IMG/VR virus record: IMGVR_UViG_3300042923_000569
Coordinates: 248,001-312,000 of that record
Length of the DNA stretch: 64,000 bases
Reading direction: 5' to 3' (one strand)
This document shows positions 40,195 through 60,527 of this stretch, piece by piece. Every line of letters starts with the position of its first letter. Position 1 is the first letter of the stretch. Position numbers and translations under genes: made by a program. A model generated the notes under the pieces. It saw only the letters and a list, made by a program, of their open reading frames with translations. It searched no databases and was not told the origin of the DNA.

Positions 40195-40222
40195 AATATT
40201 ACCTTTGTGCTTGTTTAATTTG

Positions 40223-40305
40223 AGCGGAATACAGGATTCGAACCTGCGTAAACTATTCGCCTCTTGCTTGGAAGGCAAGTGCTCTACCAACTGAGCTAAT
40301 CCCGC
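40223..40305 (-). tRNA. tRNA-Gly(UCC) with long variable region
   Basis: CTTGC-CTTCCAA-GCAAG; U73; 15-nt variable region AGGCGAATAGTTTAC. Confidence 0.88.
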
Positions 40306-45026: not shown

Positions 45027-45103
45027 TGGAGGGATACCAGTGGACTCGAACCACCAACGCAAGGATTTCACATCTCCGCTCTACCAATTGAGCTAGGCAA
45101 CCC
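45027..45103 (-). tRNA. atypical tRNA (8-bp acceptor, degenerate anticodon arm, identity unclear)
   Basis: Canonical D and T arms and CCA; anticodon arm GGAGA-TGTGAAA-TCCTT. Confidence 0.6.
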
Positions 45104-51389: not shown

Positions 51390-51513
51390 TGGCGGCGAGT
51401 ACTGGATTCGAACCAGTGACCAGGACATTAAAAGTGTATGAGTTATGGTTGCTGCGGGAATCCAATCAGGATTCCTTGGGTTCTACCTGCTCTACCAACT
51501 GAGCTAACTCGCC
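51390..51513 (-). ncRNA. tRNA-Lys(UUU) interrupted by a 48-nt GAAUC/CAGCAA module (RNA I)
   Basis: Removing 51438-51485 gives a 76-nt cloverleaf with GGACA-CTTTTAA-TGTCC and CCA. Confidence 0.88.
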
Positions 51514-59611: not shown

Positions 59612-59721
59612 TGCATAAAGTAGGGTTCGAACCTACAAGGGAACCTCGCGGCTGCTCCCGAAGTCCTATCTTCGCTTTCGCTATTGTCGGACTCTCCGTT
59701 TACCAATTCCGGCATTTATGC
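59612..59721 (-). ncRNA. tRNA-Leu-like RNA with 22-nt anticodon loop
   Basis: Acceptor GCATAAA/TTTATGC-A, Leu-type D-arm, GAGTCC-[22 nt]-GGACTT, long variable arm, canonical T-arm. Confidence 0.8.
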
Positions 59722-59723
59722 AT

Positions 59724-59808
59724 TGGTGCGTCTGGTCGGACTCGAACCGACAAGCCATACGGCGGGGGATTTTAAATCCCCTGTGTTTACCAATTTCACC
59801 ACAGACGC
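59724..59808 (-). tRNA. tRNA-Leu(UAA), second copy
   Basis: GGGGA-TTTAAAA-TCCCC; CCA encoded. Confidence 0.95.
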
Positions 59809-59890
59809 TTTGTTCATCTTATATAAGTGTAGGCGTGTTCCGACGACCTCGTGTTAGTTGCTCGACATATTATGTCGCTACCTTTAGTGC

Positions 59891-59977
59891 GGCGGGTAGA
59901 GGGAATCGAACCCCCGTAGCGATGAAACGCATTGACTAAGCTAGCACGTCAATTGAGGTCGCCAACCTCATACCCGC
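59891..59977 (-). ncRNA. atypical tRNA-like RNA (long D stem, 11-nt anticodon loop)
   Basis: GCGGGTA/TACCCGC, GAGGT-TGGCG-ACCTC, ATTGAC-GTGCTAGCTTA-GTCAAT, GGGGG-TTCGATT-CCCTC. Confidence 0.75.
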
Positions 59978-60021
59978 ATCGATAATCGATGAACCACTAA
60001 AGCTCACTTATATTTTAAATT

Positions 60022-60097
60022 TGGTGCAGACAGCAGGATTCTAACCTGCGTCCATACATTCGGAATGTATGTGTTTTGACCCATAAACTATATCTGC
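60022..60097 (-). tRNA. tRNA-Arg(CCG)-like, atypical T-loop
   Basis: ATACA-TTCCGAA-TGTAT; T-loop TTAGAAT; CCA encoded. Confidence 0.7.
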
Positions 60098-60098
60098 T

Positions 60099-60173
60099 TG
60101 GTGCCCCTGACAGGATTCGAACCCGCGAATCACGGTTTTAGGGACCGCTGTTCTACCATAGAACGGCAGGGGC
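60099..60173 (-). tRNA. amber suppressor-like tRNA (CUA)
   Basis: GCGGT-CCCTAAA-ACCGT; full cloverleaf and CCA; C8 and C33 are non-canonical. Confidence 0.75.
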
Positions 60174-60193
60174 GTTGTTGTCTTGATGTATCT

Positions 60194-60223
60194 ATTATAC
60201 CACAGTTTTTCGAGCCGTTTCAA
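60194..60223 (-). promoter_or_regulatory. WTGAAAC-type phage promoter
   Basis: TTGAAACG...TGTGGTATAAT upstream of the CUA tRNA. Confidence 0.78.
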
Positions 60224-60257
60224 TTTTTTCTTCAATTTTCAACGGCTTGGGCAAAAA

Positions 60258-60527
60258 TCAATCAGTACTGTTACGTAGCTCAATGCAATGTGAGATATAA
60301 GTTCCTACCCACCAGCATAGTACTACAAGATTTACTACAGGTAAACTGCAAACTAAAATTATCGCTACAGTTAAACCCCAAATATTTCCGAAGCTATAAC
60401 CAAACTTCGGGTCAGGCTTACAATATCCTAATAAACAAAGAATATCGTATACTGCAAAACAAAGGAACATTACAATTCCAATTGTTAAACATAGCCAGAG
60501 ATACCCATACCAAATAGTTAATAACAT
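60258..60527 (-). CDS. hypothetical membrane protein
   Basis: Two TM segments. Confidence 0.7.
   Translation of the reverse strand: MLLTIWYGYLWLCLTIGIVMFLCFAVYDILCLLGYCKPDPKFGYSFGNIWGLTVAIILVCSLPVVNLVVLCWWVGTYISHCIELRNSTD

What the first reader, a model, noticed from the sequence alone, without database searches (positions are those of the whole stretch)
60099..60173. Amber (CUA) suppressor-like tRNA as first gene of a tRNA operon
Seen: an intact cloverleaf with loop CCCUAAA on a Trp-like arm (GCGGT/ACCGT), encoded CCA, and non-canonical C8 and C33, immediately after a promoter. Several CDS here end normally in TAG, so the genome is not recoded. Inference: a weak or conditional suppressor for regulated read-through, or a decoy.
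Basis: partly seen in the sequence, partly recalled or inferred. Interest (0 to 1): 0.7.

Follow-up and report, generated by a model that had tools for sequence, protein, structure and literature searches.

The report
Jumbo-phage amber-suppressor tRNA, odd allele
This is a real tRNA gene with a stop-codon-reading (CUA) anticodon. The same tRNA is kept at the same spot in a whole clade of giant enterobacterial phages that otherwise use the normal genetic code, and the copy here is an unusual allele with several universal tRNA bases changed.

Summary
It is a 75-nt cloverleaf with four fully paired stems, loop CCCUAAA (anticodon CUA), an encoded CCA, C8 and C33. It also has C9, U14, A15 and U16. 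It starts 20 nt after a strong sigma70-like promoter and heads a run of tRNA and tRNA-like genes. ARAGORN misses it; Rfam's tRNA model scores 50.6 bits.

It is not a one-off. Orthologs sit at the same site in a close IMG/VR relative and in phages GAP32 ('Sup-tRNA'), CBB ('tRNA-Pyl'), fHe-Yen9-04 ('tRNA-Sup-CTA') and BF. All carry CUA-A37-A38, and 11 of 21 base pairs show compensatory change.

The genome is not recoded: I found no convincing in-frame TAG. TAG is about half as common as a stop in the suppressor-bearing phages as in relatives that lack the tRNA.

Public metagenomes carry at least three alleles at this locus. C33 occurs in two of them, and in what is probably a fourth tRNA from a different genomic context. 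The broken tertiary core is specific to the window's allele.

Best reading: a conserved phage amber suppressor, probably charged with Lys or Gln by host enzymes, and probably weakened in this allele. The 'Trp-like arm' is not conserved. This is a known kind, already annotated in relatives but never studied functionally.

The parts
60194..60223 (-). Sigma70-like promoter: -35 TTGAAA, 18-nt spacer, TG-extended -10 TATAAT. The tRNA's 5' end lies 20 nt after the -10.
   Evidence: 11 of 12 hexamer matches, with TG before the -10. The same motif stands before the orthologous tRNA in G001, CBB and GAP32. It recurs at four other places in the genome, one of them directly upstream of a tRNA-Met.
60099..60173 (-). 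tRNA with anticodon CUA (amber-suppressor type), allele A. It has C8, C9, U14, A15, U16 and C33. CCA is encoded at 60101-60099.
   Evidence: Rfam tRNA model, 50.6 bits. Family model R1, 88.7 bits. All 21 stem pairs are standard. Orthologs with CUA lie at the same site.
60139..60141 (-). Anticodon C34 U35 A36. C33 is at 60142, and A37 and A38 are at 60138-60137.
   Evidence: Read. No variant at these places in any of eight public runs.
60022..60097 (-). tRNA-Arg(CCG), second gene of the transcription unit, 1 nt after the suppressor's CCA. Its T loop has A56 in place of the universal C56.
   Evidence: 59 bits. No tRNA with a CCG anticodon was called in G001, GAP32 or BF, and none sits at the orthologous site in G001, CBB or GAP32. 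Natural allele B has C56.
59888..59977 (-). tRNA-like element. It has acceptor stem GCGGGUA/UACCCGC and a T arm, but a non-standard, variable middle. An outer helix (about 60005-59994 with 59892-59877) flanks it.
   Evidence: Read. Conserved ends and a variable middle in CBB and G001. Weak hit to the tmRNA 3' end (13.6 bits). ARAGORN calls it only with introns allowed.
59724..59808 (-). tRNA-Leu(UAA), canonical.
   Evidence: 61.2 bits. It is 94.9% identical to the tRNA-Leu of Xanthomonas phage XaC1.
59612..59721 (-). A 110-nt tRNA-like gene with an enlarged anticodon region and a long variable arm. Its CBB ortholog is annotated tRNA-Val(GAC).
   Evidence: Rfam tRNA model, 36.6 bits. CBB annotation. 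ARAGORN calls it only with introns allowed.

Best explanation
The gene is this phage's copy of a conserved amber-suppressor tRNA carried by the Mimasvirus/Eneladusvirus group of Rak2-like jumbo phages.

Shown:
- It is a cloverleaf tRNA gene with a CUA anticodon and an encoded CCA.
- It sits directly behind a consensus host-type promoter.
- It is orthologous by position and sequence to CUA tRNAs in at least five other phages.
- Its stems evolve by compensatory change, while C34 U35 A36 A37 A38, the first three acceptor pairs (G1-C72, C2-G71, C3-G70) and A73 stay fixed.

Inferred:
- It is transcribed early by host RNA polymerase, trimmed, and charged by a host synthetase. LysRS is the most likely, then GlnRS, because U35 plus A73 on a short-variable-arm body is what those enzymes accept. 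The nearest body within the phage is tRNA-Lys(CUU).
- It then competes with release factor 1 at UAG.
- The phage uses the standard code and has few TAG stops (about 4%), so it pays little for this. The read-through would fall mainly on host mRNAs that end in UAG. The state is also one that could precede TAG recoding.
- In this allele, C33 and the loss of the U8-A14 and 15-48 tertiary contacts, together with a D stem that can extend to 6 pairs, probably lower its activity relative to the canonical orthologs.
For: - A real tRNA: Rfam 50.6 bits; all stems paired.
- Orthologs with CUA at the same site behind the same promoter: G001, GAP32 annotated 'Sup-tRNA', CBB annotated 'tRNA-Pyl anticodon CTA', fHe-Yen9-04 annotated 'tRNA-Sup-CTA', BF.
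- Covariation: 11 of 21 pairs changed on both sides in only 4 sequences, 95% of cells paired, 0 of 500 shuffles as high, and slid controls give 0 to 4 such pairs.
- Loop positions 34-38 are invariant. Every ortholog except the window-type alleles has CUCUAAA. From my recollection of the Yarus and Kleina work that PMC11231383 cites, this is the A36-A37-A38 context found in efficient amber suppressors. The review passage I read states only the general 'extended anticodon' principle.
- TAG is the stop in 53 of 1513 ORFs of at least 100 aa in four suppressor-bearing phages, against 84 of 1148 in three relatives without the tRNA. Odds ratio 0.46, Fisher p = 1.2e-5. All-frame TAG trinucleotide shares are similar.
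- After a TAG stop the next in-frame stop comes sooner in suppressor-bearing phages: median 4 codons against 7.
- Allele A is unchanged in six public runs besides the two that may be the source, and has one pair-preserving change (A39 to G) in a seventh. C33 with CUA also occurs in natural allele B, which has an otherwise canonical core, and probably in a 42-nt piece from contigs with unlike flanks.
- Body affinity: the second-best hit of family model R1 in the window is tRNA-Lys(CUU), 61.8 bits. Only the phage's two tRNA-Lys genes share the 5' GCC start.
Against: - There are no expression, charging or suppression data for any member, and no RNA run could be laid on the locus.
- The window allele lacks U33, U8 and A14 and has an A15/C48 mismatch. 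ViennaRNA extends its D stem to 6 pairs with a 3-nt loop, which would bury G18 and G19. ARAGORN rejects it but accepts allele B. It may therefore be poorly active or inactive.
- The TAG depletion compares two clades, so it amounts to one or two evolutionary events, and it rests on crude ORF calls.
- The affinity to tRNA-Lys is marginal: mean identity 0.64, against 0.63 for an elongator Met and 0.61 for Phe.
- Four of the seven sequences carry two conserved acceptor-stem mismatches (U4.C69 and U5.U68). That is unusual for an efficient elongator tRNA.
- No beneficiary gene was found.
Confidence: 0.55

Rival explanations
1. Allele A is a decaying or already inactive copy. The family is, or was, a suppressor, but this phage's version has lost the tertiary core and U33. 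It persists only because it is young or harmless.
For: - C8, C9, U14, A15 and U16 and the variable loop GAUUC all differ from every ortholog.
- ARAGORN rejects allele A but accepts allele B.
- The neighbouring tRNA-Arg(CCG) in the same allele also carries a lesion at a universal base (A56). Allele B has C56 there.
- The predicted D stem extends to 6 pairs with a 3-nt loop.
Against: - All 21 stem pairs are intact.
- Relative to allele B, two acceptor mismatches have become G-C pairs through four coordinated changes. That is not what decay produces.
- The encoded CCA and the promoter are intact.
- The allele is common and unchanged in independent samples, and is the only allele seen in X3, X6 and X12. 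The one substitution seen (A39 to G) keeps the pair.
Confidence: 0.22
2. The tRNA has an anti-defence or other non-decoding role. It could be a tRNA-shaped target, sponge or replacement aimed at host tRNA-cleaving defences. Fast turnover of the body, and C33, would then be escapes from an anticodon nuclease.
For: - Phage tRNAs are known to counter tRNA-targeting defences through anticodon-loop changes (PMC10264068, read; PMC11555353, title and abstract only).
- C33 lies next to the 33/34 bond that I recall PrrC-type nucleases cutting in tRNA-Lys (from memory). The body is Lys-like.
- The locus is polymorphic within populations: three alleles occur in the same samples.
- The phage carries many other aberrant tRNA-like genes.
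Against: - A replacement tRNA should read a sense codon. Nothing explains why CUA-A37-A38 would stay invariant for a decoy.
- About a third of this phage's tRNAs show the same kind of allele replacement against G001, so the turnover is not special to this gene.
- No defence or anti-defence gene is linked to it. The neighbouring ORFs match no Pfam family at or above its curated cut-off.
Confidence: 0.1
3. Programmed read-through or partial recoding. The tRNA would exist to read specific in-frame or terminal TAG codons in phage genes, for example late genes, as in TAG-recoded phages.
For: - Suppressor tRNAs accompany TAG recoding in many phages (bioRxiv 10.1101/2021.08.26.457843; PMC13037316).
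- One gene (genome 138644-139231, minus strand) keeps TAG as its stop in all four genomes compared.
Against: - ORFs of at least 60 aa cover 89% of the genome under code 11.
- Only one TAG-terminated ORF has an in-frame continuation of 40 or more codons. That case is a spurious ORF in front of a NadR-like gene with its own start codon.
- ORFs that become longer when TAG is read through are no more gap-filling than the TGA or TAA controls.
- Among apparent in-frame stops in tblastn alignments between four suppressor-bearing genomes, TAG makes up 57 of 267 (21%). That equals its all-frame trinucleotide share.
- Extensions after the conserved TAG are not conserved in length or sequence.
- No RF-1 domain gene is present.
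Confidence: 0.05
4. It is a pyrrolysine tRNA, as ARAGORN labels the orthologs.
For: Only the CUA anticodon and the automatic label 'tRNA-Pyl'.
Against: - The anticodon stem has the standard 5 pairs and the variable loop has 5 nt. G18 G19 and the T loop UUCGAAU are present. From memory, tRNA-Pyl has a 6-pair anticodon stem and a 3-nt variable loop and lacks these motifs.
- There is no PylS catalytic domain in the genome.
Confidence: 0.01

Closest known systems
CUA tRNAs annotated in Cronobacter phage GAP32 ('Sup-tRNA'), Yersinia phage fHe-Yen9-04 ('tRNA-Sup-CTA') and Pectobacterium phage CBB ('tRNA-Pyl'), and the unannotated one in Serratia phage BF
   Same: - Same genomic site, behind the same promoter and ahead of the same tRNA-Leu and tRNA-like genes.
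- Same anticodon, A37 and A38.
- Same G1-C72, C2-G71, C3-G70 and A73.
- Same D stem, G18-G19 and T loop.
   Different: - The window's copy has C8, C9, U14, A15, U16 and C33 where they have U8, A9, A14, G15, C/U16 and U33.
- It has a different anticodon stem and variable loop.
- Its acceptor stem is fully paired. CBB, BF and Yen9-04 carry the U4.C69 and U5.U68 mismatches.
- It is followed by an extra tRNA-Arg(CCG).
- Identity to these orthologs is only 59-74%.
Suppressor tRNAs of stop-codon-recoded phages (code 15 crAss-like, Lak and other gut phages)
   Same: A phage-encoded tRNA with a CUA anticodon, in an AT-rich, TAA-preferring genome with few TAG stops.
   Different: - This genome and its relatives show no in-frame TAG and normal coding density under code 11.
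- There is no phage RF2 or RF-1 domain gene.
- From memory of that literature, the body is not Gln-like.
Classical E. coli amber suppressors (supE tRNA-Gln, supF tRNA-Tyr, Su7 tRNA-Trp, synthetic tRNA-Lys CUA)
   Same: The family's CUCUAAA loop and A36-A37-A38 context match those of efficient laboratory suppressors. This rests on my recollection of the Yarus and Kleina work cited in PMC11231383. The anticodon arm of the window allele resembles Su7's.
   Different: - Those are single-base mutants of host tRNAs. This is a long-standing, separately evolving phage gene.
- It has A73 and a GCC/GGC acceptor end, unlike Gln or Trp (G73).
- It has a short variable arm, unlike bacterial Tyr.
- It has C33 in this allele.
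Phage tRNAs with anticodon-loop changes that escape host anticodon nucleases (van den Berg et al. 2023, PMC10264068)
   Same: A phage tRNA with a non-canonical anticodon-loop base, in a phage carrying about 30 tRNAs.
   Different: Those are sense-codon tRNAs that replace cleaved host tRNAs. This one reads a stop codon, and no nuclease target is known for it.

Membership tests
tRNA (Rfam RF00005) | Cloverleaf scoring above the family's gathering threshold | tested here: met
   50.6 bits against a gathering score of 29, with model positions 1-71 fully matched.
tRNA (canonical elongator) | Universal bases U8, A14, U33, G18 G19, T loop U54-U55-C56 and a purine at 37 | tested here: not met
   G18 G19, the T loop UUCGAAU and A37 are present. 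Positions 8, 14 and 33 are C, U and C. Orthologs have the universal bases, except that allele B also has C33.
Amber-suppressor tRNA | Anticodon CUA at positions 34-36 of a 7-nt loop closed by a 5-pair stem | tested here: met
   Loop CCCUAAA between GCGGU and ACCGU.
Amber-suppressor tRNA | Anticodon conserved among orthologs while the body changes in a structure-preserving way | tested here: met
   CUA in 7 of 7 sequences. 11 of 21 pairs are compensatory in 4 sequences, with 0 of 500 shuffles as high.
Amber-suppressor tRNA | Is aminoacylated and inserts an amino acid at UAG in vivo | not testable with these tools
   No RNA or proteome data could be used. The only indirect sign is a twofold TAG-stop depletion in suppressor-bearing phages.
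Stop-codon-recoded phage (genetic code 15) | Many genes with in-frame TAG, and low coding density under code 11 | tested here: not met
   89% coverage by code-11 ORFs. No excess of in-frame TAG.
tRNA-Pyl | The special tRNA-Pyl architecture, plus pylS in the genome | tested here: not met
   Standard arm and loop sizes, with G18 G19 and a normal T loop. No PylS_Cterm match.
tRNA-Trp-derived suppressor (Su7-like) | Trp-type body: G73 and a Trp-like arm conserved among orthologs | tested here: not met
   A73 in all sequences, and the arm sequence differs in every ortholog. BLAST similarity to actinophage tRNA-Trp is short and weak: 81-86% over 41-53 nt, E from 8e-5 to 3e-3.
tRNA-Lys(CUU)-derived suppressor | Body closest to the phage's tRNA-Lys(CUU); A73 and U35 | tested here: inconclusive
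   The second-best R1 hit is tRNA-Lys(CUU), 61.8 bits. It shares the 5' GCC, the variable loop UUGUC and CUCU in the loop. The identity margin over Met and Phe is only 0.01-0.03.

The most novel reading that the evidence does not exclude
A clade of standard-code jumbo phages deliberately keeps a working UAG-decoding tRNA as a weapon or as part of a private translation system. Two versions are open.

(a) It forms a natural pair with the phage's own tyrosyl-tRNA synthetase. That enzyme is present in all six suppressor-bearing phages checked and absent from all five relatives without the tRNA. The tRNA has A73, U35 and A36, which I recall as TyrRS determinants.

(b) It drives read-through of host UAG-terminated genes during takeover. 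In that case the C33 alleles would be tuned variants, or variants that resist a host nuclease.
Probability: 0.15. Interest if true: 0.75.

Novelty: new member of a known kind. Interest (0 to 1): 0.42.

Why it matters
Why phages that use the standard genetic code carry stop-codon suppressor tRNAs is an open question. Most known cases come from uncultured, recoded gut phages.

Here the same CUA tRNA is conserved across two genera of culturable jumbo phages, which infect Cronobacter, Pectobacterium, Serratia, Yersinia and Erwinia. It shows clear signs of selection on structure and anticodon. TAG stops are twofold depleted in these phages, and there is no recoding.

That makes the question testable at the bench. 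One can ask which amino acid is inserted, whose mRNAs are read through, and what the phage loses without the tRNA.

The natural allele series would also be a ready-made test of how much U33 and the tRNA core matter for stop-codon decoding. It runs from a canonical form, to C33 alone, to C33 with a remodelled core.

A practical point: ARAGORN misses this allele, so suppressor tRNAs are probably undercounted in phage surveys.

Tried and rejected
- ARAGORN on the window and on the whole genome does not call the gene. It does call natural allele B, so the miss comes from the core changes, not from C33.
- BLAST of the tRNA against E. coli genomes gave only E values of 2 or more, to tRNA-Asn and tRNA-Arg. 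Uninformative.
- IMG/VR pattern scans with the T arm plus acceptor end returned mostly unrelated tRNA-Thr, Arg and Leu genes. Scans with the flanking 14-mer returned chance hits. Only CBB, GAP32, Yen9-04 and one close relative are in that collection.
- Read-through search: post-TAG extensions, ORFs lengthened by reading TAG through (with TGA and TAA controls), in-frame stops in cross-genome tblastn, and stop-codon conservation. None gave a convincing case. The one long extension is a spurious ORF ahead of a NadR-like gene.
- Genome searches for an RF-1 domain, PylS, class IIb aaRS (Lys/Asp/Asn) and Gln/Glu aaRS found nothing. Only a TyrRS is present.
- A Pfam scan of five neighbouring small ORFs found nothing at or above any family's curated cut-off. 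The only hits were two sub-threshold zinc-ribbon-like matches in one ORF.
- Assigning the tRNA's ancestry by identity to the phage's own tRNAs was unresolved: Lys(CUU) 0.64, Met 0.63, Phe 0.61. The phage's tRNA-Tyr shares only the loop context.
- 'Hypervariable locus' as a feature special to this tRNA is rejected. About a third of the tRNAs show the same 0.67-0.80 identity class between this phage and G001.
- Literature: the CBB paper does not discuss the CUA tRNA. Searching an Eneladusvirus paper for suppressor, amber and related terms found no mention of it. No paper on function in standard-code phages was found.
- Expression could not be examined.
Full report
**Setting**

The window is bases 248001-312000 of a 357,873-bp phage genome from IMG/VR, with direct terminal repeats and 35.8% G+C. 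It is a Rak2-like jumbo phage. Its nearest named relatives by DNA are Pectobacterium phage CBB and Cronobacter phage GAP32 (Mimasvirus) and the Eneladusvirus phages fHe-Yen9-04 and BF. A closer uncultured relative, G001 (355,155 bp), matches the flanks of the locus at 87.6%. ARAGORN finds 30 tRNA genes in the genome, 26 of them in the window, all on the minus strand.

**The observation**

The feature is on the minus strand, from 60173 down to 60099. It folds into a cloverleaf in which all 21 stem pairs are standard. Its parts are:
- acceptor stem GCCCCUG/CAGGGGC
- D stem GUUC/GAAC
- anticodon stem GCGGU/ACCGU
- T stem GCGGG/CCUGU
- T loop UUCGAAU
- discriminator A73
- an encoded CCA

The anticodon loop is CCCUAAA, so the anticodon is CUA, with C33, A37 and A38. 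Rfam's tRNA model scores it 50.6 bits (E = 7.6e-9, gathering score 29). ARAGORN does not report it.

Its variable loop is GAUUC, which leaves A15 opposite C48. With U14 and A15, the D stem can extend to six pairs around a 3-nt loop in the ViennaRNA fold.

A promoter lies at 60223-60194: TTGAAA, 18 nt, then TG-n-TATAAT. It matches 11 of 12 hexamer positions and ends 20 nt before the tRNA. The same promoter motif recurs elsewhere in the genome. One copy is directly upstream of a tRNA-Met.

Five tRNA or tRNA-like genes follow the promoter without an intervening ORF:
1. this tRNA
2. tRNA-Arg(CCG)
3. a tRNA-like element
4. tRNA-Leu(UAA)
5. a 110-nt tRNA-like gene

So the observation, and the description 'first gene of a tRNA operon', are confirmed.

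**It has orthologs, and the anticodon does not vary**

A CUA tRNA stands at the same place, behind the same promoter, in:
- G001
- GAP32, annotated 'Sup-tRNA; discovered using tRNAscan-SE'
- CBB, annotated 'tRNA-Pyl, anticodon CTA'
- fHe-Yen9-04, annotated 'tRNA-Sup-CTA'
- BF, where it is unannotated

In an alignment of four of them, 11 of 21 pairs carry changes on both sides and 95% of cells stay paired. None of 500 shuffles reaches these values. Sliding the partners gives 0 to 4 such pairs. Across seven sequences, the invariant positions include:
- G1-C72, C2-G71 and C3-G70
- A73
- G10
- G18 and G19
- the first six bases of the T loop (UUCGA-)
- C32
- the whole run C34 U35 A36 A37 A38

It does not vary. 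The family loop is CUCUAAA. From my memory of the Yarus and Kleina papers, this is the A36-A37-A38 context of efficient laboratory amber suppressors. The review that cites them states only the general 'extended anticodon' principle (PMC11231383).

A covariance model of the family (R1) finds no CUA tRNA in five other Rak2-like phages: RaK2, K64-1, UE-S1, XaC1 and Hallingskeid. Its best hits there are sense tRNAs. ARAGORN finds no stop-codon anticodon in the three of these that I fetched whole: RaK2, UE-S1 and Hallingskeid.

**Not recoded, and no read-through target found**

Crude ORF calls under code 11 cover 89% of the genome. Stops are TAA 395, TGA 87 and TAG 23. Four conserved minus-strand ORFs in the window end in TAG.

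- Only one TAG-terminated ORF continues in frame for 40 or more codons. It is an implausible 83-aa ORF in front of a NadR-like gene that has its own ribosome-binding site and ATG.
- ORFs that lengthen when TAG is read through fill no more unassigned sequence than the TGA or TAA controls. Their translations do not look like interrupted genes.
- In tblastn comparisons among four suppressor-bearing genomes, TAG accounts for 57 of 267 apparent in-frame stops (21%). That equals its share of stop trinucleotides in all frames, 0.20-0.22.
- One gene (genome 138644-139231) keeps TAG as its stop in all four genomes. What follows the stop differs in length and sequence between them.
- The genome has no RF-1 domain gene and no PylS.

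**Indirect signs that UAG decoding matters**

Using the same ORF caller (ORFs of at least 100 aa), I compared TAG stop use:

| Group | Phage | TAG stops |
|---|---|---|
| With the tRNA | this phage | 3.9% |
| With the tRNA | G001 | 4.3% |
| With the tRNA | GAP32 | 3.0% |
| With the tRNA | BF | 2.8% |
| Without | RaK2 | 6.1% |
| Without | UE-S1 | 8.3% |
| Without | Hallingskeid | 7.5% |

Pooled, this is 53 of 1513 against 84 of 1148 (odds ratio 0.46, Fisher p = 1.2e-5). All-frame TAG shares do not differ in that direction. After a TAG stop, the next in-frame stop is also nearer in the suppressor-bearing phages: median 4 codons against 7, and within 10 codons in 79% against 63%.

Both results fit selection against exposed TAG stops where a suppressor is active. 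But they compare two clades, so they may amount to a single evolutionary event, and they rest on crude gene calls. I treat them as supporting evidence only. Borges et al. proposed that loss of a stop codon precedes its recoding in phages (bioRxiv 10.1101/2021.08.26.457843). This clade could be an example of that state, already holding the tRNA.

**Which amino acid?**

This is inference only.

BLAST finds 81-86% identity over 41-53 nt to actinophage tRNA-Trp genes. But the arm differs in every ortholog, and the discriminator is A73 rather than G73.
- Within the phage, the family model's next-best hit is tRNA-Lys(CUU), at 61.8 bits. The two tRNA-Lys genes are the only other short-arm tRNAs starting with GCC. 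tRNA-Lys(CUU) shares the variable loop UUGUC and the loop CUCUUAA, one base away from CUCUAAA.
- The identity margin is nonetheless small: 0.64, against 0.63 for Met and 0.61 for Phe.
- From established identity rules (from memory: Giegé et al. 1998; Normanly et al. 1990), short-arm tRNAs with CUA and A73 are mostly charged with Lys in E. coli, and some with Gln.

So Lys is my first guess and Gln my second.

A separate lead is the phage's own tyrosyl-tRNA synthetase. It is a full-length bacterial type: TIGR00234 at 352 bits, with best PDB matches to bacterial TyrRS. The enzyme is present in all six suppressor-bearing phages examined and absent from all five relatives without the tRNA. From memory, A73, U35 and A36 are TyrRS determinants, and CUA is one base from the Tyr anticodon. 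Against this:
- the co-occurrence is confounded by phylogeny
- bacterial TyrRS normally also reads a long variable arm
- the phage has an ordinary tRNA-Tyr(GUA)
- the CBB authors link the enzyme to that tRNA (PMC5259590)

**Alleles in nature**

Logan contigs from eight public runs were laid on 59900-60400.

- **Allele A** is the window's sequence. It recurs with no change inside the tRNA in X3, X4, X7, X9, X12 and X16. In X6 it has a single change, A39 to G, which keeps the 31-39 pair as U.G.
- **Allele B** occurs in X4 and X9. It differs from A at 12 tRNA positions in X9, and at a thirteenth (60132) in X4.
  - It has the canonical U8, A9, A14, G15 and C16 and the variable loop GUGUC.
  - Its acceptor stem is GCCUUUG/CAUCGGC, as in CBB, BF and Yen9-04, with the mismatches U4.C69 and U5.U68.
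  - It keeps the same anticodon arm, including C33.
  - ARAGORN calls it as tRNA(cta).
  - Its neighbouring tRNA-Arg(CCG) has the normal C56, where the window has A56.
- **Allele C** is the G001 type. It appears as joints that skip 143-151 nt (X7, X9) and as loose ends that match G001's tRNA (X4).
- **A fourth form.** A 42-nt piece covering the same C33-CUA arm lies in 1.7-2.9-kb contigs whose flanks are unlike the window, in X4, X9 and X16. It probably belongs to a fourth tRNA in another genomic context.

Two conclusions follow. First, C33 is not an assembly error or a private lesion, because it persists on at least two different tRNA bodies. Second, the remodelled core is specific to allele A.

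Relative to allele B, allele A converts both acceptor mismatches into C-G pairs through four coordinated changes. That does not look like decay. Its changes at 8, 9 and 14-16 and in the variable loop remove tertiary contacts, which does look like decay.

Turnover of tRNA alleles is general in this genome region. Identities between this phage and G001 are bimodal, either 0.97-1.00 or 0.67-0.80. The suppressor (0.75) falls in the second class, along with about a third of the tRNAs. So I do not claim special hypervariability for this gene.

**Verdict**

The finding is real. It is one allele of a conserved phage-encoded amber-suppressor tRNA family that database records already label as such, but that I could not find discussed or tested in the literature.

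The most likely mechanism is ordinary: early transcription, charging by a host synthetase, and competition with release factor 1 at UAG. This would be tolerated by a phage with few TAG stops, and its effects would fall mainly on host mRNAs.

Whether allele A itself is active is uncertain. I put the family-level suppressor reading at about 0.55. The 'inactive allele' rival is at about 0.2. A non-decoding or anti-defence role is at about 0.1. Programmed read-through of phage genes is at about 0.05.

The most novel reading still open is that the tRNA works with the phage's own TyrRS, or serves as a host-takeover tool with tuned C33 alleles.

Noticed in passing
window 59888-59977 (-), outer helix about 60005-59994 with 59892-59877: A tRNA-like element with a 7-pair acceptor stem (GCGGGUA/UACCCGC) and a good T arm. 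Its middle is non-standard, including an 11-nt 'anticodon' loop that contains CUA. The ends are conserved and the middle varies in CBB and G001. GAP32 has an ordinary tRNA-Leu with the same acceptor stem at this site. There is a weak Rfam hit to the tmRNA 3' end (13.6 bits).
   Followed up: partly
window 59612-59721 (-): A 110-nt tRNA-like gene with an anticodon region enlarged by about 15-17 nt and a long variable arm. Rfam tRNA model scores it 36.6 bits. ARAGORN misses it unless introns are allowed. The CBB ortholog is annotated tRNA-Val(GAC).
   Followed up: partly
window 51393-51513 (-): A 121-nt tRNA with an insertion of about 49 nt in the anticodon-arm region. Matches of similar length (120-126 nt) occur in fHe-Yen9-04, BF, CBB and G001.
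   Followed up: partly
window 60022-60097 (-): tRNA-Arg(CCG), 1 nt downstream of the suppressor's CCA, has A56 in the T loop (UUAGAAU). No tRNA with a CCG anticodon was called in G001, GAP32 or BF, and none sits at the orthologous site in G001, CBB or GAP32. A natural allele in runs X4 and X9 has the normal C56.
   Followed up: partly
genome 325653-325740 (-), outside the window: The phage's only tRNA with a CCA (Trp) anticodon is an 88-nt molecule with a long variable arm and a 3-pair D stem. That is an odd architecture for tRNA-Trp.
   Followed up: no
genome 169991-170848 region (-), outside the window (L107:1183-2448): A full-length bacterial-type tyrosyl-tRNA synthetase (421 aa, TIGR00234 at 352 bits). 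Its presence tracks the presence of the CUA tRNA in 11 of 11 Rak2-like phages checked, though this is confounded by phylogeny.
   Followed up: partly
genome 162965-163546 (-), outside the window: An ORF that looks like NrdG (anaerobic ribonucleotide reductase activase), judged by eye from its CxxxCxxC motif, not by a search. It ends in two consecutive TAG codons.
   Followed up: no
window 24000-62100 and the rest of the tRNA region, against G001: tRNA identities between this phage and its close relative G001 are bimodal: 0.97-1.00 or 0.67-0.80. This points to frequent allele replacement of individual tRNA genes within otherwise collinear DNA.
   Followed up: partly
window 45027-45103 (-) and 40222-40305 (-): ARAGORN calls a 77-nt tRNA-Ser(UGA) without a long variable arm, next to a normal 91-nt tRNA-Ser(UGA). 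It also calls an 84-nt tRNA-Gly(UCC). Both sizes are unusual for those identities.
   Followed up: no
acceptor stems of the CUA tRNAs in L001 (CBB), L034 (BF), L035 (Yen9-04) and natural allele B: Two adjacent pyrimidine mismatches (U4.C69 and U5.U68) are conserved across two phage genera. They are replaced by C-G pairs in the window's allele, and by C-G and U-A pairs in GAP32.
   Followed up: partly
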